The translations under genes and the position numbers were made by a program. This document shows, piece by piece, positions 391 to 55,318 of a stretch of 64,000 bases of DNA (position 1 is the stretch's first letter; the number at the start of each line of letters is the position of its first letter). The notes below the pieces were generated by a model, which saw nothing but the letters and a program-made list of their open reading frames with translations, was not told the origin of the DNA and searched no databases. The stretch is from Rebecca billardiae RCC1528 (taxonomy: Eukaryota; Protista; Haptophyta), in NCBI GenBank assembly GCA_965240325.2, contig OZ251236.1, positions 1,860,001 through 1,924,000 on the forward strand, written 5' to 3'.

Positions 391-425
<35 letters not shown>

Positions 426-2142: not shown

Positions 2143-2179
<37 letters not shown>

Positions 2180-12883: not shown

Positions 12884-12970
12884 GCGGAGGCACCCCTCCC
12901 GCTCGGCCTCGGTCTTGCTCGGTCCGTCACGCACTCACGCCCGGGCCCGCGCGGCTCGTGCACCTGCACG

Positions 12971-37110: not shown

Positions 37111-40100
37111 ATGCGCGCGGCAGGCTGCGTGCTGCTGGCCGCGTGCCTGCTGGGTGGGCGGAGCGCGCACGCGCTCAACCCCGGCGACCTCGCCATCGTC
37201 GGCGTGAACACCGTCAACCCAGACGAGATCGCGGTCGTCGCGCTGGCCGACATCCCGTCCGGCACCGTGATCTACTTCACGGACAACGGGTGGAAGGCGG
37301 ACAGCAGTTGGCGCACGGGCGAGGGGACGCACACGTGGACGCTTGGCTCGGCCGTCTCGACGGGCACCGTCGTGACCATCACGCTCTCCGGCCCGCTGCT
37401 CGCGGCCGCGGGCGACGTGCTGTACGCGTACACGAACACCGAGGCGGCCCCCAACTTCCTCTACGCCATCTCGACCGCGAGGGACGCGTTCGACGCGGAC
37501 TCGACGTCCGCGAGCACGGGCGCGCTACCCTCCACCCTCACGCTGGGCACCTCAGCCGTGGCGCTGGGCGGCGCCTCCGCGTCTATTGAAAACGCTGAGT
37601 ACGTAGGCGCTCGGAGCGGCACGGCGGACGCGCTGCGGGCTGCGATCGGCAACGCGGCGAGCTGGACGACGTCGTCGTCGCGCTACGCGTTCGACTCCAG
37701 CGCATTCAGCGAGAGCACGCCGGCTGCGCTCAGCCCCGGCGACCTTGCCATCGTCGGTGTGAACACCGTCAACCCAGACGAGATCGCGGTCGTCGCGCTG
37801 GCCGACATCCCGTCCGGCACCGTGATCTACTTCACGGACAACGGGTGGAAGGCGGACAGCAGTTGGCGCACGGGCGAGGGGACGCACACGTGGACGCTTG
37901 GCTCGGCCGTCTCGACGGGCACCGTCGTGACCATCACGCTCTCCGGCCCGCTGCTCGCGGCCGCGGGCGACGTGCTGTACGCGTACACGAACACCGAGGC
38001 GGCCCCCAACTTCCTCTACGCTATCTCGACCGCGAGGGACGCGTTCGACGCGGACTCGACGTCCGCGAGCACGGGCGCGCTGCCCTCCACCCTCACGCTG
38101 GGCACCTCGGCCGTGGCGCTGGGTGGCGCCTCCACGTCTATTGATAACGCCGAGTACGCAGGCGCTCGGAGCGGCACGGCGGACGCGCTGCTGGCTGCGA
38201 TCGGCAACGCGGCGAGCTGGACGACGTCGTCGTCGCGCTACGCGTTCGACTCGAGCGCATTCAGCGTGAGCACGTTGCCGCTCCCGCCACCCTCGCCACC
38301 GCCGCCGAGCCCGCCGCCATCGCCGCCGCCGAGCCCGCCGCCGAGCCCGCCGCCATCACCGCCGCCGAGCCCGCCGCCACCCAAGCCACCACCCAGCCCA
38401 CCACCGTCCCCGCCGAGCCCGCCACCGAGCCCACCGCCGTCAGCGCCGCCGAGCCCGCCGCCCAGCCCACCGCCTGGCCCGCCACCAAGGCCGCCGCCGA
38501 GCCCGCCGCCGACCCCGCCGCCATCGCCACCACCATCGCCACCGCCGAGCCCGCCGCCGAGCCCGCCGCCGAGCCCGCCGCCGAGCGCGCCGCCGGACCC
38601 ATCACCGCCAAAACCGCCACCAAGGCCGCCGCCATCGCCACCACCATCGCCACCGCCACGCCGGCCGCCGAGCCCGCCGCCGAGCCCACCGCCGAGCCCG
38701 CCGCCATCACCGCCGCCATCGCCACCGCCGTCACCGCCCCCGCCATCGCCGCCGCCGAGCCCGCCGCCGAGCCCACCACCATTTCCGCCGCCGAGCCCGC
38801 CGCCGCCGAGCCCGCCGCCCAGCCCGCCGCCCGGCCCGCCGCCCTCGCCGCCGCCCTCGCCGCCGCCGAGCCCGCCGCCCAGCCCGCCGCCGCCATCGCC
38901 GCCGCCATCGCCACCTCCGTCACCGCCGCCATCTCCGCCGCCGAGCCCACCGCCGCCTTCGCCACCGCCCTCGCCACCACCGAGCCCGCCGCCCAGCCCA
39001 CCGCCAAGCCCACCGCCACCGTCGCCGCCGCCGTCGCCGCCGCCGAGCCCGCCACCATCGCCGCCGCCGTCGCCGCCTCCAAGCCCACCACCTGTGCCAC
39101 CGCCGAGCCCGCCGCCGAGCCCGCCACCACCATCACCGCCACCGTCACCGCCGCCCTCGCCGCCGCCCTCGCCGCCGCCCTCGCCGCCGCCGCCCTCGCC
39201 GCCACCATCGCCGCCACCATCGCCGCCGCCCAGCCCGCCGCCCGGCCCGCCGCCCTCGCCGCCGCCCTCGCCGCCGCCGAGCCCGCCGCCCAGCCCGCCG
39301 CCGCCATCGCCGCCGCCATCGCCACCGCCGTCACCGCCGCCATCTCCGCCGCCGAGCCCACCGCCGCCTTCGCCACCGCCCTCGCCACCACCGAGCCCGC
39401 CGCCCAGCCCACCGCCAAGCCCACCGCCACCGTCGCCGCCGCCGTCGCCGCCGCCGAGCCCGCCACCATCGCCGCCGCCGTCGCCGCCTCCAAGCCCACC
39501 GCCTGTGCCACCGCCGAGCCCGCCGCCGAGCCCGCCACCACCATCACCGCCACCGTCACCGCCGCCCTCGCCGCCGCCCTCGCCGCCGCCCTCGCCGCCG
39601 CCGCCCTCGCCGCCACCATCGCCGCCACCATCGCCGCCGCCCAGCCCGCCGCCCGGCCCGCCGCCCTCGCCGCCGCCCTCGCCGCCGCCGAGCCCGCCGC
39701 CCAGCCCGCCGCCGCCATCGCCGCCGCCATCGCCACCGCCATCACCGCCGCCATCTCCGCCGCCGAGCCCGCCGCCGCCCTCGCCACCGCCCTCGCCACC
39801 ACCGAGCCCGCCGCCCAGCCCACCGCCAAGCCCACCGCCACCGTCGCCGCCGCCATCGCCGCCGCCGAGCCCACCACCATCGCCGCCGCCGTCGCCGCCT
39901 CCAAGCCCACCGCCTGTGCCACCGCCGAGCCCGCCGCCGAGCCCGCCACCACCATCACCGCCACCGTCACCGCCGCCCTCGCCGCCGCCCTCGCCGCCGC
40001 CCTCGCCGCCGCCGCCCTCGCCGCCACCATCGCCGCCACCATCGCCGCCGCCCAGCCCGCCGCCCGGCCCGCCGCCCTCGCCGCCGCCCTCGCCGCCGCC

Positions 40101-43100
40101 GAGCCCGCCGCCCAGCCCGCCGCCGCCATCGCCGCCGCCATCGCCACCGCCGTCACCGCCGCCATCTCCGCCGCCGAGCCCACCGCCGCCTTCGCCACCG
40201 CCCTCGCCACCACCGAGCCCGCCGCCCAGCCCACCGCCAAGCCCACCGCCACCGTCGCCGCCGCCGTCGCCGCCGCCGAGCCCGCCACCATCGCCGCCGC
40301 CGTCGCCGCCTCCAAGCCCACCGCCTGTGCCACCGCCGAGCCCGCCGCCGAGCCCGCCACCACCATCACCGCCACCGTCACCGCCGCCCTCGCCGCCGCC
40401 CTCGCCGCCGCCCTCGCCGCCGCCGCCCTCGCCGCCACCATCGCCGCCACCATCGCCGCCGCCCAGCCCGCCGCCCGGCCCGCCGCCCTCGCCGCCGCCC
40501 TCGCCGCCGCCCAGCCCGCCGCCCAGCCCGCCGCCGCCATCGCCGCCGCCATCGCCACCGCCGTCACCGCCGCCATCTCCGCCGCCGAGCCCGCCGCCGC
40601 CCTCTCCACCGCCCTCGCCACCACCGAGCCCGCCGCCCAGCCCACCGCCAAGCCCACCGCCACCGTCGCCGCCGCCATCGCCGCCGCCGAGCCCACCACC
40701 ATCGCCGCCGCCGTCGCCGCCTCCAAGCCCACCGCCTGTGCCACCGCCGAGCCCGCCGCCGAGCCCGCCACCACCATCACCGCCACCGTCACCGCCGCCC
40801 TCGCCACCGCCCTCGCCGCCGCCCTCGCCGCCGCCGCCCTCGCCGCCACCATCGCCGCCACCATCGCCGCCGCCCAGCCCGCCGCCCGGCCCGCCGCCCT
40901 CGCCGCCGCCCTCGCCGCCGCCGAGCCCGCCGCCCAGTCCGCCGCCGCCATCGCCGCCGCCATCGCCACCGCCGTCACCGCCGCCATCTCCGCCGCCGAG
41001 CCCACCGCCGCCTTCGCCACCGCCCTCGCCACCACCGAGCCCGCCGCCCAGCCCACCGCCAAGCCCACCGCCACCGTCGCCGCCGCCGTCGCCGCCGCCG
41101 AGCCCGCCACCGTCGCCGCCGCCGAGCCCGCCGCCGCCCTCGCCGCCGCCCTCGCCACCACCGAGCCCACCGCCCTTGCCACCGCCAAGCCCGCCGCCAC
41201 CGTCGCAACCACCATCGCCTCCGCCGAGCCCACCACCGAGCCCTCCACCGAGCCCACCACCACCGTCGCCACCCCCTAGCCCGCCACCAGCGCCGCCCCC
41301 GAGTCCGCCGCCACCACTCCCGCCTCCGTCACCGCCGCCATCGCCGCCCCCGTCGCCGCCGCCCAGCCCGCCGCCCTCGCCTCCGCCCTCGCCACCGCCG
41401 AGCCCACCGCCGCCTCTACCGCCACCGAACCCGCCCCCCAGCCCGCCACCAGCACCACCGCCGAGCCCGCCGCCGCCATTCCCGCCACCGAGCCCGCCAC
41501 CTGTCCCTCCGCCCTCGCCCCCTCCGAGCCCGCCGCCCGTGCCGCCGCCCAGCCCGCCACCCAGCCCGCCACCGAGCCCCCCACCGCCGTCTCCGCCGCC
41601 GTCTCCACCGCCGGTCTCGCCTCCGTCACCTCCGCCGCGCCCGCCGCCCTCGCCACCACCGAGCCCGCCGCCCACCCCGCCGCCATCGCCACCTCCGAGT
41701 CCGCCGCCGCAGCCGCCACCGTCGCCCCCGCCAAGCCCGCTGCCGCCATCTCCGCCACCGAGCCCACCGCCATCGCAGCCGCCGAGCCCACCTCCGAGCC
41801 CACCACCGCCGGTGCCGCCACCAGTTCCACCGCCATCGCCGCCACCGGCCTCGCCGCCGAGCCCGCCGCCGAGCCCGCCGCCAGCCACACCGCCATCGCT
41901 TCCGCCGAGCCCGCCCCCGCCCGCTCCGCCTCCGTCACCGCCACCGCGTCCACCGCCCCCGCCGCCACCAGTGCCGCCGCCGCCAAGCCCGCCACCAAGC
42001 CCGCCGCCGCCAAGCCCGCCGCCGCCAACGCCGCCTCCAAGCCCGCCGCCGGCCGCTCCGCCCGCCCCGCCGCCTTCGCCCCCACCTGGCATGCCGCCTG
42101 CTGCTCCACCACCTGCACCGCCGCCGAGCCCGCCGCCAGCCCCCCCGCCCGCCGCGCCGCCGCCACTGCCTCCGCCGTCGCTGCCGCCGCAACCGCCGCC
42201 CAGCGCGCCGCCTGCCTCGCCGCCGCCGAGCCCGCCTCCCCTGCCCCCGCCGAGCCCACCCCCTCCGAGCCCACCGCCCCTTCTGCCACCGCCGCCGAGA
42301 TCGGAGCCGTTCCCTCCGCCCGCACCTCCGCACACGCCGCCGAGCCCTCCGCCGAGCCCGCCGCCCTTGGCCCCGCCTTCGCCGCAGCCGCAGCCGCCGC
42401 CTCGATCCCCGCCGCTGCCGCCGCCGCGGCAGCCGCCGCCACCGCCGCCTGCGAGCCCGCCGAGCCCGCCACCAACACCGCCGCCACGGCTGCCGCCGTC
42501 GTCACCGCCGTTGTATCCGCCGGCATCGCCCCCGCCGTCGCCGCCGCCGAGCCCACCGCCGTCGCCGCCGCCGCCAAGCCCGCCGCCGACACCGCCGCCG
42601 CCGCCACGCACGGATCCGTTCCCGCCGCCTTCGCCGCCGAGTCCGCCGCCATCCCTGCCGCCGTTGCCACCGCCGCCGCCGCCGCCTTCTCCGCCGCCGA
42701 GCTCGCCGCCAGCGTCACCACCGCAGCCGCCACCGTCCCTGCCGCCCAGCTCGCCGCCGCCACCGCCACCGGCACCACCGCCATCACAACCACCGTCGCT
42801 GCCGCCGAGCGCGCCGCCGAGCACGCCGCCGGTACCGCCACCGAGCGCACCGCCATCGACGCCACCATCGTCGCCGCCGCCGAGCCCGCCACCGGCGCTG
42901 CCCCCGCCGCCACGCACGCAGCCGTTCCCACCGCCCTTGCCGCCCAGTCCGCCGCCCAGCCCACCGCCTCCGCCGCCGCCATCGCCGCCGCCATCGCCTC
43001 CGCCGAGCCCGCTGCCGGCACTGCCGCCACACCCGCCGCCGTCAGCACCGCCATCGACGCCGCCGTCGCCGCCGCCCCGGTCGCCGCCGCCGTCGCCGCC

Positions 43101-46100
43101 GCCCTTGCCGCCGCCGCCGAGCCCGCCGCCGGCACCGCCGCCGCCACGCACGGATCCGTTCCCGCCGCCTTCGCCGCCGAGTCCGCCACCATCGCCACCG
43201 CCGTTGCCACCGCCGCCGCCGCCGCCTTCTCCACTGCCGAGCTCGCCGCCAGAGTCACCACCGCAGCCGCCACCGTCCCTGCCGCCCAGCTCGCCGCCGC
43301 CACCGCCACCGGCACCACCGCCATCGCAACCGCCGTCCCTGCCGCCGAGCGCGCCGCCGAGCACGCCGCCGGCACCGCCACCGAGCGCACCGCCATCGAC
43401 GCCACCATCGTTGCCGCCGCCGAGCCCGCCTCCGGCGCCGCCGCCGCCGCCACGCACGCAGCCGTTCCCACCGCCCTTGCCGCCCAGTCCGCCGCCCAGC
43501 CCACCGCCTCCACCGCCGCCATCGCCGCCGCCATCGCCTCCGCCGAGCCCGCCGCCGGCACCGCCGCCACACCCGCCGCCGTCATCGCCGCCATCGACGC
43601 CGCCGTCGCAGCCGCCCCGGTCGCCGCCGCCATCGACGCCGCCGTTGCCGCCTCCGCCGAGCCCGCCGCCGACGCCGCCTCCGCCGCCACGCACGGATCC
43701 GTTCCCGCCGCCTTCGCCGCCGAGTCCGCCACCATCGCCGCCGCCGTTGCCACCGCCGCCGAGCACACCGCCACAGCGACCGCCACCCCCACCTCCGGCC
43801 CCGCCACCGTCCCTGCCGCCGAGCGCGCCGCCGAGCACGCCGCCGGCACCGCCACCGAGCGCACCGCCATCGACGCCACCATCGTTGCCGCCGCCGAGCC
43901 CGCCTCCGGCGCTGCCGCCACCGCCGCGCACGCAGCCGTTCCCACCGCCCTTGCCGCCCAGTCCGCCGCCCAGCCCACCGCCTCCGCCGCCGCCATCGCT
44001 GCCGCCATCGCCTCCGCCGAGCCCGCCGCCGGCACCGCCGCCACACCCGCCGCCGTCATCGCCGCCATCGACGCCGCCGTCGCAGCCGCCCCGGTCGCCG
44101 CCGCCGTCGCCGCCGCCGTTGCCGCCGCCGCCGAGCCCGCCGCCGACACCGCCGCCGCCGCCACGCACGGATCCGTTCCCGCCGCCTTCGCCGCCGAGTC
44201 CGCCGCCATCCCCGCCGCCGTTGCCACCGCCGCCGCCGCCGCCTTCTCCGCCGCCGAGCACACCGCCACGGCCACCGCCACCCCCGCCTCCGGCCCCGCC
44301 ACCGTCCCTGCCGCCAAGCGCGCCGCCGAGTGCGCCACCGGCACCGCCGCCGAGCGCACCACCATCGACGCCACCGTCGTCGCCGCCGCCGAGCCCGCCA
44401 CCGGCGCTGCCCCCGCCGCCACGCACGCAGCCGTTCCCACCGCCCTTGCCGCCCAGTCCGCCGCCGAGCCCACCGCCTCCACCGACGCCATCGCCACCGC
44501 CATCGCCTCCGCCGAGCCCGCCGCCGGCACCGCCGCCACACCCGCCGCCGTCATCGCCGCCATCGACGCCGCCGTCGCAGCCGCCCCGGTCGCCGCCGCC
44601 GTCGCCGCCGCCGTTGCCGCCGCCGCCGAGCCCGCCGCCGACACCGCCTCCGCCGCCACGCACGGATCCGTTCCCGCCGCCTTCGCCGCCGAGTCCGCCG
44701 CCATCGCCGCCCCCGTTGCCACCGCCGCCGCCACCGCCGTCTCCGCCGCCGAGCACACCGCCACGGCCGCCGCCACCTCCGCCTCCGGCCCCGCCACCGT
44801 CCCTGCCGCCAAGCGTGCCTCCAAGCGCGCCGCCGGCATCGCCTCCGAGCGCACCGCCATCAACGCCACCGTCGTCGCCGCCGCCGAGCCCGCCGCCGGC
44901 GCTGCCCCCGCCGCCACGCACGCAGCCGTTCCCACCGCCATCTCCGCCGTCACCGCCGCCATCGCCGCCACCGTTGCCCCCACCGTCATTGCCGCCTCTG
45001 CCTCCGCCGAGCCCGCCGCCGGCACCGCCGCCACACCCGCCGCCGTCAGCACCGCCATCGACGCCGCCGCCGCCGCCGCCGCCCGCGCCGCCGCCGCGCC
45101 CGCCGCCGGTGCCGCCGACACCGCCGCCGCCGCCGCGCACGGAGCCGTTCCCGCCGCCCGCGCCGCCGAGCCCGCCGCCGAGCTCGCCTCCGTCACCACC
45201 GCCCAGCTCGCCACCGCCGCCACCGCCGTCGCCGCCGCCATCGCCGCCGCCGGGCCCGCCGCCGCACCCGCCGCCGAGCTCTCCGCCGCCGCTGCCGCCG
45301 CCCAGCCCGCCGCCGCCGCCGCCGCCCGCGATCCGCGTGAGCGTGCTCAGCGGCAGCCGCGAAGGCGCGCCGCTCGGCTCGGACGACGCGGCGCTCGAGC
45401 TCGAGGGTGCGGGCTTTGACAGCCTGGCCGGCGGCGAGTTTGGCGAGATCCAGTGCGCCTTCACGCGCGCCGATGGCGGCGGGGACGGTGGCGGCCCGCT
45501 GCTCTCGGGCGCGACGGTGCTGAGCGACGCGCGGCTGCGCTGCGCCATGCCCGCCGCCGCCTCGTCCGGCGCGCCCTCCGCCGCGGGCGCGTACACCGTC
45601 GGCCTCGCCCTCGGCGCCGTGGGCGCGTCCACGGACGTGGATGTCTCCGGGCTCTTCGGCCCGGTCTCGTTTGAGCTGTACGACATGGCGGCCGTGTCGG
45701 TGCTCGAGCTGCGCCCGCCGGGCGGGCCGGTGGGCGGCGGCACGGCGGTCACGCTCGTGGGCTCGGGCTTTGCCGAGTACGGCGAGGGCCAGCTGTGCTG
45801 CGTGCTCGGCGGCGGCGGCTGCGCGGCGGCGGCGACGCTGCTGCCGCCGTCGGCGGCGGCGCCAACCCTGAGCCGCGCGCGCTGCGTGCTGCCGCCGCCG
45901 CTGGGCGGCGCGGCGGGCAGCGTGGCGCTCGAGCTCTCGCTTGGCGGCGGCAGCGCCGACTCGACCACCGCCTCGGCGCTGCCCTTCCTCGCGTACGACC
46001 CGCCCACCCTCGGCTCCGTCAGCCCGGCGAGCGGCGACGCGAACGGCGGCACGGAGGTGACGATCGGGGGCGCGGGCTTTGACGCGCTGGCCGGCGGCGC

Positions 46101-49100
46101 GCTGCTGGCCGTGCGCTTCGGCGACGCGCCCGCGCAGCCGCCGGCGCGCGTCACGGCGGGCGAGGTTGTCGTCTCCACGCGGTACGGCGCCGCGGGCCGC
46201 GCGCAGCTCCGCGTGTCGCTCAACGGCCAGCAGTTCACGCCCGCGGCCGCCGCGACGCCGCCGCCCGCGGGTGCGCTCGCGTTCACGTTCGTCGGCCTGC
46301 ACGCGCCCGTGCTCGAGGGTGTGGCGTTCAACGGCGCGGCGACGCTGATGGTGCTGCGCTTCGACGCGCAGCCGACCGACCGCGCGGGCATGGGCAGCGG
46401 CATGGGCGAGTGCTCGCGCGTCCTCGACGACGACACCGTCGCGCTGGTCGGCGGCGGCGCGGCCGCGGCCGCGGCCGCGCCGCCGCAGTGCTACTGGACG
46501 GACGACTCGACGCTCGTCGCGCGGCTGAGCTCGGCGACGCTCGTGCGCGCCGGCTCGGAGGTGGGCGTGCGCGCGGGCGCGCTGCGCCCCGAGCAGTGCG
46601 GCACGCCGTGCGCCGCCGCCCTCGCCTCCGCCGCCGCGCGCGCCGCCATCGACGCGGACGCGCCGTGCGGCGAGGGCGTGCCGTGCCCGATGCCTGTCGC
46701 AGCCGTGTCGGGCCCGGCGGTGCTCTCGGCGTGCCCGGGCGCGTCGCTCGCGCTCGACGGCTCCGCCTCGTCGCGCGGCGGCATCGGGCCCGCCGCCTTT
46801 GAGTGGCGCGTCGACCCGAGCCGCTCGGCGCGCGCGGCGTCGCTCAACGCGCGGCTGAGCGCGCTGCCGGCGCGCACGCCTCAGCTCTCGCTCGGCGGGC
46901 CCGGTGCGGCCTCGCCGACCGAGCTCGGAGTGAGCGGCTCGTTCGTGTTTGTGCTGCGCGTCACGTCCTTCCTCGGCGTGCCCTCCGCGCCCGCCGAGTG
47001 GCCCGTGTCGCGCGGCGACGGCGCCAGCCCGATCCTCGCCATCGATGGCGCGCCCGAGCTGCGCGCGCGCGCCTCCGAGCCCACGCTGCTGAGCGGGCGC
47101 GCGGAGCTCGCGCCGTGCTGGCCGCCGAGCTTCGAGCCGGCGATGGTGTTCAGCTGGGCGCTCGAGGGCGCGGCGCAGGTGGGCGGCGGCGCGAACGCGA
47201 GCAGCAGCGCTTCCGCCGGCGAGCTCGCCGCCGCGACGGACGTGCTGCTCGCGCGCCTCGCGTCCGCGCGCACCGCGGTGCTGCAGCTGCCGCCGCACTC
47301 GCTGGCCGCCGGCTGGGCGTACGACCTGGCGCTCACGGCGAGGATGGCGGCGGCACCCGCGCAGGCGTCGACGGCGCGCGTGCGCGTGCGCGTCGCGCGG
47401 CAGCCGCTGCGCGCGGTGATCGCCGGCGGCGACCGCCGCGTGCCGAGCTCGCTGCGCCTCGCCGTCGACGCCTCCGCGTCATTCGACCCCGATGCGCCGA
47501 CGGCCGACGGCGGCGACGGCGGCATGCCGCCGCTGTCGTTCGCGTGGAGCGTGGCGAACGCGAGCTCGCTCGAGCCGGTGGCTCTCGAGCCGTCCGCGGC
47601 GAACGCGAGCGGCGCGCTCTTCGAGCTTGCGCCCGGCACGCTGCCGCCCGGCGTGTACGCGCTCACCGTGCGCGTGTCCGCGCCCGGCCGCGCGCCCGCG
47701 GCCGCGTCGGTGACGGTCGAGGCGGTGCCGGGCGCGGTGCCCACGCTCGGCTTCGAGCCGCTCGGGCGGCGCAAGTGGCCGGCGGTGTTCGACCGGAACC
47801 CCGAGCGGCTGACGATCAACGCGCGCCTCGACGCTGCCTCGCGCGCGCTCGAGGCGGCGGGGCAGGCGCGCTTCAGCTACGAGTGGAGCGCGCGGCGCGT
47901 GGGCGCGGCCGGCGCGCTCGAGCCCGCCGGTCTCGACCTCGCGGACAGCGAGCGGGTGAGCACGACGGGCGCGGCGCTGCGCACGGTCGCGATCCGCAGC
48001 GGCGCGCTCGCGCCCGGCGCGACGTACGCGTTCCGCCTCGCCGTGCTCGGCGGCGCGCAGCCCGCGTACACGGAGGTGCGCGTCACGATCAATCGGCCGC
48101 CGTACGGCGGAGGGCTCGAGGTGGCGCCGGCGTCGGGCGTGGCGCTGCAGACGAGCTTTGCGCTGTACGCGGCGGGGTGGGCGGAGGACGACGAGGAGGA
48201 CCTGCCGCTGAGCTACGCGTTCTCGCACGCGCCGCTCGGCACCGACGCCGTCGCCGACGTCGCCGCGCTCGGCGCCGCCTCCGCCTCCGCCTCGGCGAGC
48301 GCGCTTCTCCCCGCGGGCAACCGCACGCTCACCGTCAGGGTGGCGGACGCGCTCGGCGGCGCGGCGCACGCGCACGCGGCCGTGGCCGTCGCGCCGCCCG
48401 GCGAGGGCGCGGGGCTGCTCGACTCGGTGCTCACGCGCGCGTACGCCGCGGTCGCGACGGGCGCGGCCGAGACCGCCACGCAGCTCGTGAGCGCCCTCGC
48501 CGACGCGCTCGACGCGACGCCCGCGGGCGGCGACAACGCCACCGTCGCCTCGGCCACGCTCGCTCGGCTGCTCGAGCTCACGGCGGGCGCGGCGGAGGCG
48601 TCCGCGCCGACGGCCGAGGCGCGCGCGGCGAGCGCGTCCGCGCTCGCCGCCGTGCTCGAGGCCGCGCCGCCCGGCGCGTTCGACGCCTCCGCGCAGACCG
48701 CGGGCCTCGAGCAGGTCGCCGCCCTCGCGTCGCAGTCGGCCGCGTCGGGCGTCGACGGACCGACCGCGGCCGCGCTGCTGCGCGCGGCGGACGCGGCGCT
48801 CTCCGCCGACGCCGACGCCGACGCGCCGCTGAGCGCGGCGGAGGCGGAGGCGGTGGGCGGAGCGGCGACGAGCGCGGTGGGCGCGCTCGCCATCGCGCTG
48901 CTCGCCGGCGCCGTGTCGGGCGAGGCGCCCTTCGAGGCCGTGGGCAAGGCCATCAACGTGAGCGCGACGCGCGCGGACGCGGGCGCGCTCGGCAACATCA
49001 CGCTGCCCGGGCCGGGCGGCGCGGGCTCGGTGGGCGTGCCGGCGAGCGTGTTCGGCGGCGTGCCGCTCGAGCTGCTCGAGGGCGGCGTTGACGTCGTGCT

Positions 49101-52100
49101 CTGGTCCTCGGCGCGCAACGTGCACGGCGACCCGTCGACGCAGGCGAACGGCACGGCCGTGGCGTCGGGGCTGGTGACGCCCGTCTTCTCCGTCACGCTC
49201 TACTCGGCGTCGGCCGGGCTGGCGCTCACCATCTCCGACCTGCCGGACGAGGGGCGCGTGCTGATCGAGGTGCCCGGGCTCGACGGCGCGGGCGGCGCGG
49301 GCGAGTGGGGCTGCGTGTGGTGGGACGAGGGCGCGAGCGCGTGGCTCGACGACGGCTGCGAGACGGTGGTCGCGCGTGCGGACGATGGCTCGCTCGCGCG
49401 CTACTGCGCGTGCACGCACCTGACCGACTTTGCGGGCGTGGCCGTGCCGACGGACGCGGACGCGGCGCGCACCGAGGTGGTCGAGTTCAACATCAACACG
49501 CTCTCCCTTGATGACGCCGCTGCAGCCGTCGGCGTCGGCTCCGGCCCCGTCCTCGCGCGCAACCCGTACATCTTCTGGCTGGTGGTGGCGATGAGTGCCG
49601 GCTGCGGACTCAGCGTGGCGCTGTTCGGGGCGCGCGACTTGCGCGACCACGCGCGGCGCAAGGAGCGCATCCGGCGGCTGCTCGCGAGCGAGGCCGGGCC
49701 CGCCGGCGGGCTGCCGGCCTCGCCGGCCAAGAGATCCTCCCCCTTCCAGCGCCGCGCGGCCAAGCTCAAGGCGGAGGAGGACGCCCTGTTTGGCGGCTCA
49801 CCGCGGCAGCCCGCGCCCGCCGACGCGCCCGCCGCCGTCGGCACGCACAGCCGGCCCGCCTCCTCCTCCGTCCCGGGGCCGCGCTTGGTGGCGCCGGCGG
49901 ACGGCGGGGACGCGGGCGGGCGCGCGGTGCGCGCGCCGGCCCCTCTCGCCTCCATCTCGCCCGAGGGCAGCTTCGCCAAGCGGCAGCCGCCCCAGCTCTC
50001 GCCGCGGCGCGGCAGCGACGGCGCCGCTAGCCGCGGCGGCGCGGAGGCGCTCGGCTTTGCCGACAGGCTCGAGGCGCGGCTCGACGACCTCGACGACCTG
50101 GTGGACGAGACGAAGCGGCGCGCGGCGCTCACGATGCAGAAGTACGCGCGCGGGCGCAAGGCGCGCGCCCGTGTCGACGAGGCCTCGCCCCAGCTCCGCG
50201 AGCGCAAGGCGCGCGCCTCGGACCGCACGCGCGACCACTCGCTGACCAAGCTCGTGCGGCTCGTGGGCGAGAGGCTGAGCACAGACCACTCGCTGCTCGG
50301 CATCTGGTTCGCCGACCCGGAGGACGCGAAGCGCGCCGAGCTGGCGCAGATCTTCTGGAACATCGCGATGCTCGGCCTCGTGATCACGTGCATGCTCTAC
50401 GACGCGAGCGGCGGGCCTCCGGACGCGTCGGCGGCGCCGAGCGTCTCGCTGCTGAGCGCGGTGCTCACGGCGCTTCTCACCGCGGCCCTCTCGTTCCCCG
50501 CGCTCGCGCTCTTCCGGCTGCTCTTCCGCTGGGGGTACGGCCGGCGCTCGGCGCCGCTCTCGAAGCGCGTGTTCGCCACGTTCCTCCGCGCCGAGCTCGC
50601 GCAGCGCGAGCGCGAGCGCGCGCCCTTCTCCACCGCCGTCAAGACGAGCGTGCGCACCGGCGCGTACCTGCGGCCCGCGCTGCCGCGCACCAACTCGGAC
50701 CGGCGCGGCGCCGGCGGCGCGCTGCGCGCCGCCGCGCCCGCCGACCTCGAGCTCGCGCGCGAGTTCGCGCGGCGCTCGTCGACCGAGGCGGAGCGCTCCT
50801 CCACGCCGCCGGGCATGCCCAGGCTCGCGCCGGTCACGCTGCCCGGCATGCCCGGCCGCTCGTCGCCGCGCGCCAAGCCGCGCCCGCCGCCGCCGCCGGG
50901 CATGACGGTGCGCCGGCCGGGCGGGCCCCGCGCCACCGGCCAGCTGCCGCCGAGCATGGCAGCGTCGGTGGCGGCGACGTCGGTGGCGACGGCGGCGGCG
51001 GCGGGGGCGGCGGAGGGCGAGCGCACCGACGCGCCCGCCGCGGCCACGGCCGCCAAGCCGGGCAGCACCTTCGCGCCGCGGGCGGTGGCCGTGCCGAGTG
51101 CTGACGCGTTCAAGCAGGGGCGAGTCACGCCCGTGCCCACCGCGGGCGCGCTCGACCCCGGCTCGTTCGGCCGGCACATGAAGTCGGACGGGGACGAGTT
51201 TGAGGCGAACGGCGGCTCCAACCACGCGGCGTCCGAGCGCGCCGCCCGACGCGCGGTCGCCGCGTCGCTCAGCGTCTCGCTCCGGGGCACGAGCGCGCAC
51301 GCGGAAGCGGAGCGCGCGGCCGCGGCCGAGCCGCCGTCCCCGCTCGGCACCGCCGTGCCCTTCTTCGAGGACGTGGCGTCGCACCGGCACGGCCGCTCGC
51401 CGCACCCCGGCTCGCCGCCGCCGAGGCGCGATGACGCGCCGCTCACGCCCAGCGGCCTCGCGGGTCGGCAACGCCCGCGCTGCTCGCACGCCTCCTCGGC
51501 ATCGTGCGCCGCCATCTCCGCCGCGTCCACCCCGCGCGCGGGCGCAGCGGACGGCGAGGAGGCGCGTGCGACCGAGGAGGCGGAGGAGGCGATGCGCACG
51601 AGCATGGACGAGGTGCTGCCCACGCCCCCGCCCAGCCCGCCGCCGCCGGGCGGTCCGGCGTTCTCGTTCAAGACGGGGCAGGTCCCCGCGCCCACCGGCC
51701 TGCCGCCCGCCAGCGCGCCCGACGGCGCGCCCGCCGCCGCTGCGGAGGAGGAGGAGGCGGAGGGCGGCGGTCTGGACGAGCAGACGGTCGCGCTGCTCAA
51801 GCTCAAGTTCGACGCGTTCGACGCGGACGACAACGGCTCGGTGGACGGCACCGAGTTCGGCGCGCTGCTCGAGTCGCTCGGCTTCCGGCTGCGCCCGCGC
51901 CGCGTGAAGCAGCTCGCCTCGGAGCTGGACACCAACGGCAACGGGCTGATCGGCTTCGACGAGCTGTGCGACTGGTACGAGAAGATGGTCGCGGACGAGG
52001 CCGCAAAGGAGGCGCGCCGCGCGGCGGGCTGGCCAGGCCGCGTGCGCCGCGCGCTGCGCAGGCTGACGCCGCCGCCACTCGCCAAGCTCGTGCTCGCGTG

Positions 52101-52383
52101 GCTGTGCATGTGGGCCATCTTCGTCGTGCTCGCGCTGCTCGCGGTCGCGTACGCGCTCACGTTTGGCGCGCAGCAGACGCGCTGGCTCCTCTTCAGCTGG
52201 ACGTTCGCCGAGGTGCAGACGCTCGGGCTGGAGGAGCCGGTCATCATCGCGCTCACCGTGCTCGCGCCCCTCCTCTTCGACCGGCTGCTCTCGCAGGGCG
52301 GCGCGACGGGCGAGGCGATCAACGAGCTGCTCGCGACGACCGTCGGGACGGCCGTCACCGCGATGCACAACCTCTGCGGCTGA
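37111..52383 (+). CDS. Giant polycystin-1 (PKD1/REJ)-like GPS receptor, ~5090 aa, with Pro-rich stalk, IQ motif and EF-hand pair
   Basis: Signal peptide; two 185-aa repeats; SPPP stalk 38281-45330; IPT/TIG-like (GPVGGGTAVTLVGSGF; GDANGGTEVTIGGAGF); REJ-like (LAVDASASFDPD, INRPPYGG.LEVAPASG.AL.T.F, DLPLSYAF); GPS WGCVWWDE..W..DGC...CACTHLTDFA at ~49306-49440; TMs; IQ at ~50122-50175; EF-hands DADDNGSVDGTE and DTNGNGLIGFDE. Confidence 0.88.
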   Translation: MRAAGCVLLAACLLGGRSAHALNPGDLAIVGVNTVNPDEIAVVALADIPSGTVIYFTDNGWKADSSWRTGEGTHTWTLGSAVSTGTVVTITLSGPLLAAAGDVLYAYTNTEAAPNFLYAISTARDAFDADSTSASTGALPSTLTLGTSAVALGGASASIENAEYVGARSGTADALRAAIGNAASWTTSSSRYAFDSSAFSESTPAALSPGDLAIVGVNTVNPDEIAVVALADIPSGTVIYFTDNGWKADSSWRTGEGTHTWTLGSAVSTGTVVTITLSGPLLAAAGDVLYAYTNTEAAPNFLYAISTARDAFDADSTSASTGALPSTLTLGTSAVALGGASTSIDNAEYAGARSGTADALLAAIGNAASWTTSSSRYAFDSSAFSVSTLPLPPPSPPPPSPPPSPPPSPPPSPPPSPPPSPPPPKPPPSPPPSPPSPPPSPPPSAPPSPPPSPPPGPPPRPPPSPPPTPPPSPPPSPPPSPPPSPPPSPPPSAPPDPSPPKPPPRPPPSPPPSPPPRRPPSPPPSPPPSPPPSPPPSPPPSPPPPSPPPSPPPSPPPFPPPSPPPPSPPPSPPPGPPPSPPPSPPPSPPPSPPPPSPPPSPPPSPPPSPPPSPPPPSPPPSPPPSPPPSPPPSPPPPSPPPSPPPSPPPSPPPSPPPSPPPVPPPSPPPSPPPPSPPPSPPPSPPPSPPPSPPPPSPPPSPPPSPPPSPPPGPPPSPPPSPPPSPPPSPPPPSPPPSPPPSPPPSPPPSPPPPSPPPSPPPSPPPSPPPSPPPPSPPPSPPPSPPPSPPPSPPPSPPPVPPPSPPPSPPPPSPPPSPPPSPPPSPPPSPPPPSPPPSPPPSPPPSPPPGPPPSPPPSPPPSPPPSPPPPSPPPSPPPSPPPSPPPSPPPPSPPPSPPPSPPPSPPPSPPPPSPPPSPPPSPPPSPPPSPPPSPPPVPPPSPPPSPPPPSPPPSPPPSPPPSPPPSPPPPSPPPSPPPSPPPSPPPGPPPSPPPSPPPSPPPSPPPPSPPPSPPPSPPPSPPPSPPPPSPPPSPPPSPPPSPPPSPPPPSPPPSPPPSPPPSPPPSPPPSPPPVPPPSPPPSPPPPSPPPSPPPSPPPSPPPSPPPPSPPPSPPPSPPPSPPPGPPPSPPPSPPPSPPPSPPPPSPPPSPPPSPPPSPPPSPPPPSPPPSPPPSPPPSPPPSPPPPSPPPSPPPSPPPSPPPSPPPSPPPVPPPSPPPSPPPPSPPPSPPPSPPPSPPPSPPPPSPPPSPPPSPPPSPPPGPPPSPPPSPPPSPPPSPPPPSPPPSPPPSPPPSPPPSPPPPSPPPSPPPSPPPSPPPSPPPPSPPPSPPPSPPPSPPPSPPPPSPPPSPPPSPPPLPPPSPPPPSQPPSPPPSPPPSPPPSPPPPSPPPSPPPAPPPSPPPPLPPPSPPPSPPPSPPPSPPPSPPPSPPPSPPPPLPPPNPPPSPPPAPPPSPPPPFPPPSPPPVPPPSPPPSPPPVPPPSPPPSPPPSPPPPSPPPSPPPVSPPSPPPRPPPSPPPSPPPTPPPSPPPSPPPQPPPSPPPSPLPPSPPPSPPPSQPPSPPPSPPPPVPPPVPPPSPPPASPPSPPPSPPPATPPSLPPSPPPPAPPPSPPPRPPPPPPPVPPPPSPPPSPPPPSPPPPTPPPSPPPAAPPAPPPSPPPGMPPAAPPPAPPPSPPPAPPPAAPPPLPPPSLPPQPPPSAPPASPPPSPPPLPPPSPPPPSPPPLLPPPPRSEPFPPPAPPHTPPSPPPSPPPLAPPSPQPQPPPRSPPLPPPRQPPPPPPASPPSPPPTPPPRLPPSSPPLYPPASPPPSPPPSPPPSPPPPSPPPTPPPPPRTDPFPPPSPPSPPPSLPPLPPPPPPPSPPPSSPPASPPQPPPSLPPSSPPPPPPAPPPSQPPSLPPSAPPSTPPVPPPSAPPSTPPSSPPPSPPPALPPPPRTQPFPPPLPPSPPPSPPPPPPPSPPPSPPPSPLPALPPHPPPSAPPSTPPSPPPRSPPPSPPPLPPPPSPPPAPPPPRTDPFPPPSPPSPPPSPPPLPPPPPPPSPLPSSPPESPPQPPPSLPPSSPPPPPPAPPPSQPPSLPPSAPPSTPPAPPPSAPPSTPPSLPPPSPPPAPPPPPRTQPFPPPLPPSPPPSPPPPPPPSPPPSPPPSPPPAPPPHPPPSSPPSTPPSQPPRSPPPSTPPLPPPPSPPPTPPPPPRTDPFPPPSPPSPPPSPPPLPPPPSTPPQRPPPPPPAPPPSLPPSAPPSTPPAPPPSAPPSTPPSLPPPSPPPALPPPPRTQPFPPPLPPSPPPSPPPPPPPSLPPSPPPSPPPAPPPHPPPSSPPSTPPSQPPRSPPPSPPPLPPPPSPPPTPPPPPRTDPFPPPSPPSPPPSPPPLPPPPPPPSPPPSTPPRPPPPPPPAPPPSLPPSAPPSAPPAPPPSAPPSTPPSSPPPSPPPALPPPPRTQPFPPPLPPSPPPSPPPPPTPSPPPSPPPSPPPAPPPHPPPSSPPSTPPSQPPRSPPPSPPPLPPPPSPPPTPPPPPRTDPFPPPSPPSPPPSPPPLPPPPPPPSPPPSTPPRPPPPPPPAPPPSLPPSVPPSAPPASPPSAPPSTPPSSPPPSPPPALPPPPRTQPFPPPSPPSPPPSPPPLPPPSLPPLPPPSPPPAPPPHPPPSAPPSTPPPPPPPAPPPRPPPVPPTPPPPPRTEPFPPPAPPSPPPSSPPSPPPSSPPPPPPSPPPSPPPGPPPHPPPSSPPPLPPPSPPPPPPPAIRVSVLSGSREGAPLGSDDAALELEGAGFDSLAGGEFGEIQCAFTRADGGGDGGGPLLSGATVLSDARLRCAMPAAASSGAPSAAGAYTVGLALGAVGASTDVDVSGLFGPVSFELYDMAAVSVLELRPPGGPVGGGTAVTLVGSGFAEYGEGQLCCVLGGGGCAAAATLLPPSAAAPTLSRARCVLPPPLGGAAGSVALELSLGGGSADSTTASALPFLAYDPPTLGSVSPASGDANGGTEVTIGGAGFDALAGGALLAVRFGDAPAQPPARVTAGEVVVSTRYGAAGRAQLRVSLNGQQFTPAAAATPPPAGALAFTFVGLHAPVLEGVAFNGAATLMVLRFDAQPTDRAGMGSGMGECSRVLDDDTVALVGGGAAAAAAAPPQCYWTDDSTLVARLSSATLVRAGSEVGVRAGALRPEQCGTPCAAALASAAARAAIDADAPCGEGVPCPMPVAAVSGPAVLSACPGASLALDGSASSRGGIGPAAFEWRVDPSRSARAASLNARLSALPARTPQLSLGGPGAASPTELGVSGSFVFVLRVTSFLGVPSAPAEWPVSRGDGASPILAIDGAPELRARASEPTLLSGRAELAPCWPPSFEPAMVFSWALEGAAQVGGGANASSSASAGELAAATDVLLARLASARTAVLQLPPHSLAAGWAYDLALTARMAAAPAQASTARVRVRVARQPLRAVIAGGDRRVPSSLRLAVDASASFDPDAPTADGGDGGMPPLSFAWSVANASSLEPVALEPSAANASGALFELAPGTLPPGVYALTVRVSAPGRAPAAASVTVEAVPGAVPTLGFEPLGRRKWPAVFDRNPERLTINARLDAASRALEAAGQARFSYEWSARRVGAAGALEPAGLDLADSERVSTTGAALRTVAIRSGALAPGATYAFRLAVLGGAQPAYTEVRVTINRPPYGGGLEVAPASGVALQTSFALYAAGWAEDDEEDLPLSYAFSHAPLGTDAVADVAALGAASASASASALLPAGNRTLTVRVADALGGAAHAHAAVAVAPPGEGAGLLDSVLTRAYAAVATGAAETATQLVSALADALDATPAGGDNATVASATLARLLELTAGAAEASAPTAEARAASASALAAVLEAAPPGAFDASAQTAGLEQVAALASQSAASGVDGPTAAALLRAADAALSADADADAPLSAAEAEAVGGAATSAVGALAIALLAGAVSGEAPFEAVGKAINVSATRADAGALGNITLPGPGGAGSVGVPASVFGGVPLELLEGGVDVVLWSSARNVHGDPSTQANGTAVASGLVTPVFSVTLYSASAGLALTISDLPDEGRVLIEVPGLDGAGGAGEWGCVWWDEGASAWLDDGCETVVARADDGSLARYCACTHLTDFAGVAVPTDADAARTEVVEFNINTLSLDDAAAAVGVGSGPVLARNPYIFWLVVAMSAGCGLSVALFGARDLRDHARRKERIRRLLASEAGPAGGLPASPAKRSSPFQRRAAKLKAEEDALFGGSPRQPAPADAPAAVGTHSRPASSSVPGPRLVAPADGGDAGGRAVRAPAPLASISPEGSFAKRQPPQLSPRRGSDGAASRGGAEALGFADRLEARLDDLDDLVDETKRRAALTMQKYARGRKARARVDEASPQLRERKARASDRTRDHSLTKLVRLVGERLSTDHSLLGIWFADPEDAKRAELAQIFWNIAMLGLVITCMLYDASGGPPDASAAPSVSLLSAVLTALLTAALSFPALALFRLLFRWGYGRRSAPLSKRVFATFLRAELAQRERERAPFSTAVKTSVRTGAYLRPALPRTNSDRRGAGGALRAAAPADLELAREFARRSSTEAERSSTPPGMPRLAPVTLPGMPGRSSPRAKPRPPPPPGMTVRRPGGPRATGQLPPSMAASVAATSVATAAAAGAAEGERTDAPAAATAAKPGSTFAPRAVAVPSADAFKQGRVTPVPTAGALDPGSFGRHMKSDGDEFEANGGSNHAASERAARRAVAASLSVSLRGTSAHAEAERAAAAEPPSPLGTAVPFFEDVASHRHGRSPHPGSPPPRRDDAPLTPSGLAGRQRPRCSHASSASCAAISAASTPRAGAADGEEARATEEAEEAMRTSMDEVLPTPPPSPPPPGGPAFSFKTGQVPAPTGLPPASAPDGAPAAAAEEEEAEGGGLDEQTVALLKLKFDAFDADDNGSVDGTEFGALLESLGFRLRPRRVKQLASELDTNGNGLIGFDELCDWYEKMVADEAAKEARRAAGWPGRVRRALRRLTPPPLAKLVLAWLCMWAIFVVLALLAVAYALTFGAQQTRWLLFSWTFAEVQTLGLEEPVIIALTVLAPLLFDRLLSQGGATGEAINELLATTVGTAVTAMHNLCG
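37171..38270 (+). repeat. Near-identical coding tandem duplication, period 555 bp
   Basis: PGDLAIVGVNTVNPDEIAVVALADIPSGTVIYFTDNGW...YAFDSSAFS occurs twice. Confidence 0.95.
38281..45330 (+). repeat. Extensin-like (SPPP)n coding array with 411-bp and ~470-540-bp higher-order units
   Basis: The PGP marker recurs at 38830, 39241, 39652, 40063, 40474 and 40885; later units are marked by RTDPF/RTQPF. Confidence 0.93.
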
Positions 52384-54428: not shown

Positions 54429-54460
<32 letters not shown>

Positions 54461-55214: not shown

Positions 55215-55318
55215 GCGGCCTCGGCCGCGGTGCACGGGGCCGCCCGCGCGCACTCTTTTTGCGACCGGACGGGGGTCGGGGGCGCCCACCCACCACCGGC
55301 GGAAGGGCACAACTCACG

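What the first reader, a model, noticed from the sequence alone, without database searches (positions are those of the whole stretch)
37111..52383. Giant polycystin-1-like receptor carrying both an IQ motif and its own EF-hand pair: a possible self-contained Ca2+-switched surface sensor
Seen: one intronless 15.3-kb ORF with signal peptide, twin tip domains, ~2350-aa Pro stalk, IPT and REJ-like domains, GPS (HL|TDF), TM, IQ motif (AALTMQKYARGRKAR), two TMs, a long disordered loop ending in two EF-hands, then final TMs. Known: PKD1-type proteins autocleave at the GPS, usually have a PLAT domain after TM1 and end in a 6-TM channel-like module; IQ motifs bind EF-hand lobes. Neither PLAT nor a channel module is recognisable here. 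Inference: IQ (after TM1) and EF-hands (after TM3) are both cytosolic and could clamp intramolecularly in a Ca2+-dependent way, coupling load or ligand on a very long stalk to calcium state without calmodulin.
Basis: partly seen in the sequence, partly recalled or inferred. Interest (0 to 1): 0.85.

Follow-up and report, generated by a model that had tools for sequence, protein, structure and literature searches.

The report
Channel-less polycystin-1-like giant stalk receptor
A single 15.3-kb exon in a very GC-rich, Pavlovales-like haptophyte genome encodes a 5,090-residue surface protein: a polycystin-1-type base without the channel half, on a ~0.7-micron proline rod, with a calmodulin-binding-type IQ motif and an EF-hand pair on its cytosolic side; it belongs to an undescribed Pavlovales-wide family, and its proposed self-clamping calcium switch is untested.

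Summary
ORF 37111-52383 (+) is one continuous coding exon: third-codon-position G+C (GC3) averages 0.97 in the body against 0.61 in the flank.

Confirmed parts:
- signal peptide and two head domains 98% identical in DNA
- a 2,353-residue Ser-Pro3-4 rod
- TIG, REJ, and a GAIN fold with a canonical HL|T GPS
- five TM helices whose model matches human polycystin-1 TM1-TM5 far above any other solved chain (Z 16.1)
- a canonical EF-hand pair just before TM4

No PLAT and no TRP-like channel half was found. The IQ motif is below Pfam's cut-off in this protein. It is still credible because it recurs at the same place in about 10 homologs.

The gene is not unique. Relatives 35-42% identical occur in Diacronema lutheri, Pavlovales sp. 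CCMP2436 and environmental assemblies, named only as hypothetical, REJ or EF-hand proteins. First-stage notes of this scan report the same architecture on other pieces of this genome; none had been followed up. I found no paper describing it.

IQ and EF-hands do lie on the same (cytosolic) side. The intramolecular IQ-EF clamp "without calmodulin" remains untested. Several homologs keep the EF pair without an IQ, so it is not obligatory.

Best reading: a GPS-type adhesion or mechano-receptor of the polycystin-1/REJ kind with built-in Ca2+ sensing, probably working with separate partners. New variant of a known kind.

The parts
37111..37173 (+). Start codon and predicted signal peptide (residues 1-21, Ala at -3 and -1)
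   Evidence: Read from the sequence. It is the first ATG in the frame. No predictor was run.
37171..37725 (+). Head domain, copy A (185 aa)
   Evidence: 98% DNA identity to copy B. No Pfam family. The Atlas feature search gives uncharacterised bacterial (mostly Bacteroidota) extracellular domains at 0.97 with 220 shared features.
37726..38280 (+). Head domain, copy B
38269..45327 (+). Ser-Pro3-4 rod, 2,353 aa (329 SPPP). About 730 nm if it forms a polyproline-II helix at 0.31 nm per residue.
   Evidence: There are 6.4 copies of a 411-bp unit at 95% identity and about 4-5 copies of a 495-bp unit. Length and hydroxylation/glycosylation are inferred.
45328..46245 (+). IPT/TIG region (best Pfam stretch at residues 2965-3043)
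   Evidence: Pfam TIG 6.3e-14, 2 stretches.
47269..48324 (+). REJ domain (residues 3387-3738; it may run on, since the query piece ended there)
   Evidence: Pfam REJ 1.6e-38.
48409..49446 (+). GAIN domain: helical subdomain A plus beta subdomain B ending in the GPS
   Evidence: AF2 model m7e02514b1a43, pLDDT 81.6 and pTM 0.76. Foldseek top hits are GAIN domains of BAI3, BAI2, latrophilin, GPR126, CELSR1 and GPR110, E 1e-9 to 3e-6. Pfam GPS 2.4e-6.
49417..49425 (+). H-L-T of the GPS; predicted cleavage between L4104 and T4105
   Evidence: The motif CxCxHLTDF is invariant or nearly so in 20 aligned homologs. Cleavage itself is inferred.
49564..49632 (+). TM1
   Evidence: Hydropathy 2.14. AF2 helix with pLDDT above 90. 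Followed by 8 K/R in 21 residues.
50122..50175 (+). IQ motif (core MQKYARGRKAR) in the TM1-TM2 cytosolic loop, where PLAT sits in polycystin-1
   Evidence: Pfam IQ 13 bits, below the cut-off. Conserved as [IVL]QRxxRGxxAR in about 10 homologs. Pfam IQ hits 7 of 17 members at E<=0.1, best 3.3e-4.
50224..50334 (+). Conserved helical segment before TM2 (DHSLLGLWF...RAEL)
   Evidence: Alignments (H and R invariant). AF2 pLDDT about 80-97.
50335..50406 (+). TM2
50449..50520 (+). TM3
   Evidence: The TM2-TM3 loop has no K/R; 5 K/R follow TM3.
50521..51777 (+). Long, mostly disordered cytosolic TM3-TM4 loop (~420 aa)
   Evidence: AF2 pLDDT below 50. GC3 0.94-1.0 shows it is coding. Not conserved in homologs.
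51796..51978 (+). EF-hand pair with loops DADDNGSVDGTE and DTNGNGLIGFDE
   Evidence: Pfam EF-hand_7 6.9e-11. Calmodulin hits at 1e-10. Structure matches centrin and calmodulin lobes, Z up to 12.8. Conserved in 13-14 of 17 homologs.
52075..52158 (+). TM4, about 35 residues after the EF pair
   Evidence: Hydropathy 2.78. pLDDT above 90.
52168..52296 (+). TM5, a long helix with an invariant Glu-Pro in the middle; its second half could be a sixth pass
   Evidence: The match to polycystin-1 ends at model residue 989, which is protein residue 5048.
52297..52383 (+). Short C-terminal tail with a Cys near the end, and the stop codon
   Evidence: Tails of homologs are Cys-rich. Palmitoylation is only an inference.

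Best explanation
A real single-exon gene for a surface glycoprotein of the polycystin-1/REJ kind, reduced to the 'receptor half'.

Outside the cell:
- a duplicated head domain of a bacterial type
- a ~0.7-micron Ser-Pro rod, presumably hydroxylated and glycosylated like algal HRGPs
- TIG, REJ, and a GAIN domain with a cleavage-competent HL|T site

In the membrane: a five-helix bundle like polycystin-1 TM1-TM5.

Inside the cell:
- a helical segment with a complete IQ motif where polycystin-1 has PLAT
- a canonical EF-hand pair ~35 residues upstream of TM4
- no TRP-like channel half

Most likely mechanism (inferred):
1. The head binds a ligand or surface.
2. Pull on the rod acts on the non-covalently held GAIN/GPS junction, as in polycystin-1 and adhesion GPCRs.
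3. The five-TM base passes this on to partners, such as a separate PKD2-type channel.
4. Ca2+ feeds back through the intrinsic EF pair, which acts on TM4, and through calmodulin or a calmodulin-like light chain held on the IQ.

Shown here: gene continuity, domains, folds, topology logic, family conservation. Inferred: cleavage, glycosylation, Ca2+ and calmodulin binding, partners, cellular location.
For: - Continuous coding signature.
- Pfam TIG, REJ, GPS and EF-hand.
- GAIN fold.
- Top structural match of 48,161 chains is human polycystin-1 residues 3063-3610, i.e. TM1-TM5: Z 16.1 over 194 residues. Every other listed entry is an EF-hand domain, at Z 12.8 or below.
- Positive-inside pattern.
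- The IQ+TM2/3 and EF+TM4/5 modules are conserved at 35-50% identity in Pavlovales proteins while the loops are not.
- An MMETSP transcript (P0024), clustered at 90% identity with KAJ1633484 of Pavlovales sp. CCMP2436, spans REJ to the C-terminus in one ORF.
- Precedents: polycystin-1 binds Ca2+/calmodulin through its tail (PMC4999191). Chlamydomonas MST3 joins a proline-helix shaft hundreds of nm long to a polycystin-type TM domain (PMC11015965). SpREJ proteins have 1-11 TM segments and only half carry PLAT (PMC1934368).
Against: - No transcript or protein data exist for this gene.
- The TM modules show no sequence-level similarity to polycystin-1; the link is by fold plus the REJ/GAIN context.
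- The IQ is below Pfam's cut-off in this protein.
- No partner channel lies in the window.
- Rod length could be mis-assembled, given 95% identical repeats.
- Function, location and cleavage are all inference.
Confidence: 0.6

Rival explanations
1. The IQ helix and the protein's own EF pair bind each other in a Ca2+-dependent way, forming a self-contained switch that needs no calmodulin.
For: - Both elements are cytosolic and belong to the same polypeptide.
- Both are conserved together in about 10 family members.
- The EF pair keeps hydrophobic positions typical of a target-binding lobe, including a conserved W-Y after EF2.
- The IQ helix is modelled with pLDDT about 80, so it is not treated as free coil.
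Against: - No contact could be measured.
- A complete IQ usually binds a two-lobed calmodulin or light chain, and one EF pair covers only half of it (general knowledge).
- Five homologs keep EF-hands without an IQ, and one has three IQs without EF-hands.
- Two EF-domain alignments start at model residue 148-150 (rows 14 and 29). I read this, without coordinates, as a different and non-conserved helix (model 152-168) lying near the EF pair.
Confidence: 0.2
2. Mainly structural. The protein is the membrane anchor and shaft of a surface or flagellar hair or coat fibre, analogous to MST3 in Chlamydomonas mastigonemes. The IQ and EF modules would serve trafficking, assembly or shedding rather than sensing.
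For: - The rod would be sub-micron to micron in length.
- MST3 shows that such proline helices form filaments tethered by a polycystin-type TM domain (PMC11015965).
- Unchecked scan notes report many paralogs with different heads.
Against: - A conserved GAIN/GPS, a canonical EF pair fused to TM4 and an IQ are signalling-type parts.
- No polymerising partner or localisation is known.
- The anchor is the PC1-type five-TM bundle, not the PKD2-like domain of MST3.
Confidence: 0.15
3. Artefact. The ORF is a chance open frame in GC-rich DNA, a fusion of two genes, or an assembly error in the repeats.
For: - At about 80% G+C, long ORFs occur in several frames and on both strands.
- The repeats are 95-98% identical.
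- No RNA evidence exists.
Against: - Strong frame-specific GC3 along the whole frame.
- Five Pfam domains in the canonical order.
- High-confidence folds.
- Homologs with the same order, one of them from a transcriptome.
- All repeat units are multiples of 3 bp.
Confidence: 0.04

Closest known systems
Polycystin-1 (PKD1) and PKD1-like proteins of animals
   Same: REJ domain and a GAIN/GPS with HL|T directly before TM1. The five-helix N-terminal TM bundle matches (VIA Z 16.1 to 8z6b chain A, residues 3063-3610). The TM1-TM2 and TM3-TM4 loops are cytosolic. Ca2+/calmodulin regulation is known for PC1 (PMC4999191).
   Different: No PLAT, no TM6-TM11 TRP-like half, no C-terminal coiled coil found. 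An IQ sits in the PLAT position and an EF-hand pair in the TM3-TM4 loop. The ectodomain is a Ser-Pro rod with a bacterial-type head instead of LRR, PKD repeats and C-lectin. There is no sequence-level match in the TM part.
Sea urchin SpREJ proteins and Ectocarpus Esi0130_0068
   Same: REJ+GPS proteins with a reduced or variable TM part. SpREJ have 1-11 TM segments and only 5 of 10 carry PLAT (PMC1934368). Esi0130_0068 is an algal REJ+GPS protein with 6-7 TM expressed in male gametes (PMC4700764). Both are thought to be recognition receptors.
   Different: No IQ or EF-hand is reported in them, and they have no proline rod. Relationship beyond the shared REJ/GPS domains was not tested.
Chlamydomonas MST3 and its seven SIP-dependent relatives
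   Same: A giant hydroxyproline-type proline-helix shaft with head domains, tethered to the membrane by a polycystin-family TM domain. The family has varied heads (LRR, SRCR, SEA) (PMC11015965).
   Different: MST3 carries the PKD2-like (channel) half, lacking S1, which SIP completes. Here the anchor is the other half of polycystin-1 (REJ-GAIN-TM1-5). The lineage also differs (haptophyte versus green alga), so the likeness is probably convergent.
Adhesion GPCRs
   Same: GAIN domain fold with an autoproteolysis motif and a long adhesive ectodomain.
   Different: Five, not seven, TM helices, and the best TM match is polycystin-1.
C-terminal domains of voltage-gated Na+/Ca2+ channels
   Same: An intrinsic EF-hand-like module and an IQ motif on the same cytosolic face, with calmodulin resident on the IQ (general knowledge). 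There are weak Atlas leads to GPHH/IQ_SCN5A_C clusters.
   Different: Different order and context. No homology was shown; this is an analogy only.

Membership tests
Polycystin-1 / REJ (PKD1) family | REJ domain | tested here: met
   Pfam PF02010, E 1.6e-38, 133 bits.
Polycystin-1 / REJ (PKD1) family | GAIN fold with a GPS (HL|T) just before TM1 | tested here: met
   Pfam GPS 2.4e-6. The AF2 model matches GAIN domains at E 1e-9. HLT is conserved.
Polycystin-1 / REJ (PKD1) family | PLAT/LH2 domain after TM1 | tested here: not met
   No PLAT hit at E<=1 in the query, nor at E<=0.1 in 17 family members. The loop is helical or disordered.
Polycystin-1 / REJ (PKD1) family | TM1-TM5 bundle of the PC1 type | tested here: met
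   VIA-align Z 16.1, 194 residues, rmsd 3.2 to 8z6b_A 3063-3610. No other non-EF chain is among the 50 entries listed, which reach down to Z 8.6. This is by structure only; the profile searches found no PC1.
Polycystin-1 / REJ (PKD1) family | C-terminal six-TM TRP-like (PKD_channel) half, 11 TM in all | tested here: not met
   No PKD_channel or Ion_trans hit. The ORF stops about 70 residues after the last hydrophobic core. The next gene is a convergent kinase on the minus strand.
Polycystin-1 / REJ (PKD1) family | Autoproteolysis at the GPS | not testable with these tools
   Only the motif and fold are present.
IQ calmodulin-binding motif | Consensus [FILV]Qxxx[RK]Gxxx[RK]xx[hydrophobic] | tested here: inconclusive
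   The query has M at position 1 and otherwise fits. Pfam gives 13 bits against a cut-off of 20.3. The pattern arises in 0.55% of shuffles. The position is conserved in about 10 homologs, and 7 of 17 hit Pfam IQ at E<=0.1.
IQ calmodulin-binding motif | Binds calmodulin or an EF-hand lobe | not testable with these tools
   Needs a binding assay.
Canonical EF-hand pair | Two 12-residue loops with ligands at positions 1, 3, 5 and 12; Pfam above cut-off | tested here: met
   EF-hand_7 at 42.8 bits against a cut-off of 30. The loops are D-D-N...E and D-N-N...E. The fold matches calmodulin and centrin lobes.
Canonical EF-hand pair | Ca2+ binding | not testable with these tools
   Inference from the loop residues.
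Algal hydroxyproline-rich glycoprotein rods (MST3-like) | Long Ser-Pro(3-4) repeats forming a PPII shaft | tested here: met
   2,353 residues, 71% Pro, 329 SPPP. The helix and glycosylation are not testable here.
Algal hydroxyproline-rich glycoprotein rods (MST3-like) | PKD2-like TM domain completed by SIP | tested here: not met
   The TM part matches PC1 TM1-5, not the PKD2 fold. No PKD_channel hit.
Adhesion GPCR | Seven-TM secretin-like domain after GAIN | tested here: not met
   Five TM helices, and no 7tm Pfam hit.

The most novel reading that the evidence does not exclude
The Pavlovales family is a naturally 'split' polycystin-1. In this reading the REJ-GAIN-TM1-5 half is an autonomous module that docks in trans on separate PKD2-type channels. 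It gates them in response to pull on a micron-scale glycoprotein hair, and its own EF pair and IQ close a Ca2+ feedback loop. That would make the receptor half of polycystin-1, whose role is still debated, separable and testable by itself in a unicellular alga.
Probability: 0.2. Interest if true: 0.85.

Novelty: new variant of a known kind. Interest (0 to 1): 0.6.

Why it matters
What the N-terminal five-helix bundle and the cytosolic PLAT region of polycystin-1 do is poorly understood. Here the receptor half exists without the channel half. PLAT is exchanged for an IQ helix, and an EF-hand pair is wired directly to TM4. The arrangement is conserved across a family that spans at least two named Pavlovales taxa (D. 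lutheri and strain CCMP2436), besides the window's own genome, and is said to be expanded in this genome with different head domains.

This suggests the five-TM bundle is an independent signalling or anchoring module and that Ca2+ read-out is part of its job. It also parallels the Chlamydomonas mastigoneme protein MST3, which combines a proline-rod shaft with a polycystin-type anchor. MST3 uses the opposite half of the polycystin fold, which points to repeated evolution of micron-long glycoprotein 'feelers' on polycystin anchors.

Tried and rejected
- Word-indexed search for full-length relatives of 2,800-8,900 aa found none. A second search on the IQ-TM2-TM3 part returned only P0002.
- Sequencing-run searches listed one run of unknown kind holding 9% of the words, and no RNA run. 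Laying that run gave only short fragments 90-99% alike, mostly partial matches, which are useless for transcript structure.
- Foldseek of the whole post-GPS model against the PDB returned only EF-hand proteins. The polycystin-1 match appeared only with the Foldseek-independent search.
- Profile searches of the TM2/3 and TM4/5 modules against PDB sequences found no polycystin, only chance GPCR-level hits at E>=0.02.
- The Atlas search of the post-GPS part gave scores of 0.66 or less, which are leads only.
- Downstream exons for a channel half are rejected. The next gene is a convergent, intron-containing protein kinase, and the flank lacks coding periodicity.
- A green-alga origin, my first guess from the SPPP repeats, is rejected. 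All 11 relatives that carry an organism name are from Pavlovales, and D. lutheri has 73% G+C and 45% single-exon genes (PMC8379373).
- An IQ-EF contact in the AF2 model could not be checked, because coordinates and PAE are not returned.
Full report
**The observation**

The frame opens at 37012, but the first ATG is at 37111. From there one ORF of 5,090 codons runs to the stop at 52381-52383.

The window has 66-87% G+C, and long ORFs occur in other frames and on the other strand. ORF length alone therefore proves little.

The frame-specific signal is decisive.
- G+C at the third codon position (GC3) is 0.93-1.00 in every 100-codon window outside the proline rod.
- This includes the two long disordered loops.
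- No 25-codon window of residues 2740-5090 falls below 0.84 (mean 0.967).
- The 1.2 kb after the stop are flat at about 0.61.

The base of the protein is thus one uninterrupted coding exon. A hidden in-frame intron of 75 bp or more is very unlikely.

The next gene downstream is a convergent protein kinase on the minus strand with a frame switch typical of an intron. The genome therefore has introns, and there is no room for further plus-strand exons.

**Anatomy, from the N-terminus**

- **Signal peptide:** a plausible one at residues 1-21, read from the sequence.
- **Head domains:** two 185-residue copies whose DNA is 98% identical, so a very recent tandem duplication.
  - They have no Pfam family.
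  - They resemble uncharacterised bacterial extracellular domains in the Atlas feature search (0.97, 220 shared features).
- **Rod:** residues 387-2739 are 71% Pro and 18% Ser with 329 SPPP.
  - The rod is built from 6.4 copies of a 411-bp unit (95% identity) and about 4-5 copies of a 495-bp unit, both multiples of three.
  - As a polyproline-II helix it would be about 730 nm long. This is an inference from 0.31 nm per residue.
- **Ectodomain base:** Pfam finds TIG (6.3e-14, two stretches), REJ (1.6e-38) and GPS (2.4e-6).
- **GAIN domain:** an AF2 model of residues 3700-4180 (pLDDT 81.6, pTM 0.76) has a helical subdomain followed by a beta subdomain.
  - Its best PDB matches are GAIN domains of BAI3, BAI2, latrophilin-1, GPR126, CELSR1 and GPR110 (E 1e-9 to 3e-6).
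  - The motif CxCxHLTDF is invariant or nearly so in 20 aligned relatives.
  - The predicted cleavage is between L4104 and T4105.

**The membrane part**

Hydropathy gives TM1 (4152-4174), TM2 (4409-4432), TM3 (4447-4470) and TM4 (4989-5016). A long final helix (5020-5062) has an invariant Glu-Pro in its middle.

An AF2 model of residues 4060-5090, built on 58 family sequences, is confident for three regions and disordered in the loops:
- GPS and TM1
- the IQ helix with TM2/TM3
- the EF pair with TM4/TM5 (pLDDT mostly 80-98)

A Foldseek-independent comparison with 48,161 representative PDB chains puts human polycystin-1 from the PC1/PC2 complex (8z6b_A) first.
- The match has Z 16.1, 194 aligned residues and rmsd 3.2.
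- It aligns model residues 68-989 with PC1 residues 3063-3610, which is PC1 TM1 to TM5.
- All other listed entries are EF-hand domains at Z 12.8 or less.
- No other membrane protein appears among the 50 entries listed, which reach down to Z 8.6.

At sequence level the TM modules do not hit PC1. The link rests on fold plus the REJ/GAIN context.

No PLAT or PKD_channel is detectable in this protein (E<=1) or in 17 relatives (E<=0.1).

Charge distribution fits N-out, five TM, C-in:

| Segment | K/R count |
|---|---|
| after TM1 | 8 |
| TM2-TM3 loop | 0 |
| after TM3 | 5 |
| before TM4 | 7 |
| TM4-TM5 loop | 0 |

Both the TM1-TM2 loop and the TM3-TM4 loop are therefore cytosolic, as in polycystin-1.

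**IQ and EF-hands**

The EF pair (residues 4896-4956) is above Pfam's cut-off (EF-hand_7, 42.8 bits). It has canonical loops and matches calmodulin and centrin lobes by sequence and by fold. It lies only about 35 residues before TM4.

The IQ (core at 4342-4352) scores 13 bits, below the cut-off of 20.3. Three things argue that it is real:
- The strict pattern occurs once in the protein and in only 0.55% of shuffles.
- It recurs at the homologous place as [IVL]QRxxRGxxAR in about 10 relatives, although the surrounding linker is not conserved.
- Pfam IQ hits 7 of 17 members at E<=0.1.

**Relatives**

An exhaustive HMMER search with residues 3891-5090 found 2,500 hits in all. Most of these are EF-hand proteins. 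Of the best 150, about 60 match outside the EF-hands.

The family shares three modules: REJ-GAIN-TM1, IQ-TM2-TM3 and EF pair-TM4-TM5.

All 11 relatives that carry an organism name are from Pavlovales, and none has a functional name:
- Diacronema lutheri: KAG8462819, KAG8461221
- Pavlovales sp. CCMP2436: KAJ1636386, KAJ1635852, KAJ1633484, KAJ1630048, KAJ1617166, KAJ1617167 and KAJ1615768

They are labelled hypothetical, REJ domain-containing or EF-hand domain-containing.

One relative (P0024) comes from an MMETSP transcriptome and spans REJ to the C-terminus. This shows a single transcript for the base in a relative.

D. lutheri has 73% G+C and 45% single-exon genes (PMC8379373), which fits this window.

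The library searches turned up no paper that links REJ or polycystin-1-like proteins to haptophytes, and none that describes this IQ/EF arrangement.

First-stage notes of this scan list the same architecture on many other pieces of this genome, with RCC1, LRR or other heads. They also note PKD2-type channels. These notes are unchecked and served only as leads.

**Mechanism**

What is shown is a polycystin-1-type receptor half, without the channel half, that carries two Ca2+-signalling elements on its cytosolic face.

I consider the following sequence most likely:
1. It works like polycystin-1 or an adhesion GPCR on the outside: ligand or load on a long tether acts on a cleaved GAIN junction.
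2. It passes the signal to partners through the five-TM bundle.
3. The EF pair acts on TM4.
4. A calmodulin-type protein is held on the complete IQ.

Three points count against it as stated:
- It could not be tested here.
- Members with EF-hands but no IQ exist, and one member has IQs without EF-hands.
- Two EF-domain alignments that begin at model residue 148-150 suggest, as my reading without coordinates, that the model places a different, non-conserved helix near the EF pair.

A mostly structural role as a hair or coat fibre is a serious rival. MST3 shows that proline-helix shafts hundreds of nm long can be tethered by a polycystin-type TM domain (PMC11015965). There, however, the TM domain is the PKD2-like half.

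**Limits**

- No RNA or protein evidence exists for this gene.
- Repeat number and the head duplication depend on the assembly.
- Cleavage, glycosylation, Ca2+ binding, partners and location are inferred.

Noticed in passing
window 37171-38280: The two head domains are 98% identical in DNA, so the tandem duplication is very recent. They look like an uncharacterised extracellular domain of Bacteroidota and other bacteria (Atlas 0.97), and neighbouring clusters carry LTD or Por_Secre_tail. This may be a horizontally acquired binding domain.
   Followed up: partly
window 38269-45327: Inside the rod GC3 drops to 0.70-0.80, against 0.93-1.0 in the rest of the gene. GC skew reaches -0.46. The Pro codons are mixed (CCG/CCA/CCC), unlike the genome's usual bias, and I have no explanation for it.
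   Followed up: no
window 52168-52296: An invariant Glu-Pro lies in the middle of the last long hydrophobic helix in all family members, and the C-terminal tails are Cys-rich. These could be a functional membrane-embedded acidic site and palmitoylation sites.
   Followed up: no
window 8034-10271 (+): This ORF carries an RGS domain followed by a protein kinase domain, the architecture of a GPCR kinase (GRK).
   Followed up: no
window 11789-14443 (+): This ORF combines an F-box-like domain with an RCC1 propeller. Scan notes mention RCC1 propellers as heads of other giant receptors of this genome.
   Followed up: no
window 1-3900: This stretch has 82-87% G+C with long ORFs on both strands. It was not examined and may be another repeat-rich gene running off the window.
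   Followed up: no
window 53636-55310 (-): A convergent Ser/Thr protein kinase gene is split over two frames, which implies an intron. It shows that the genome does splice.
   Followed up: partly
scan note s1-341090 (another piece of the same genome): A first-stage note describes a 5,123-aa single-exon receptor of 15,372 letters on another piece. That is exactly the length of this frame from its GTG at 37012. It may be an allelic or duplicated contig.
   Followed up: no
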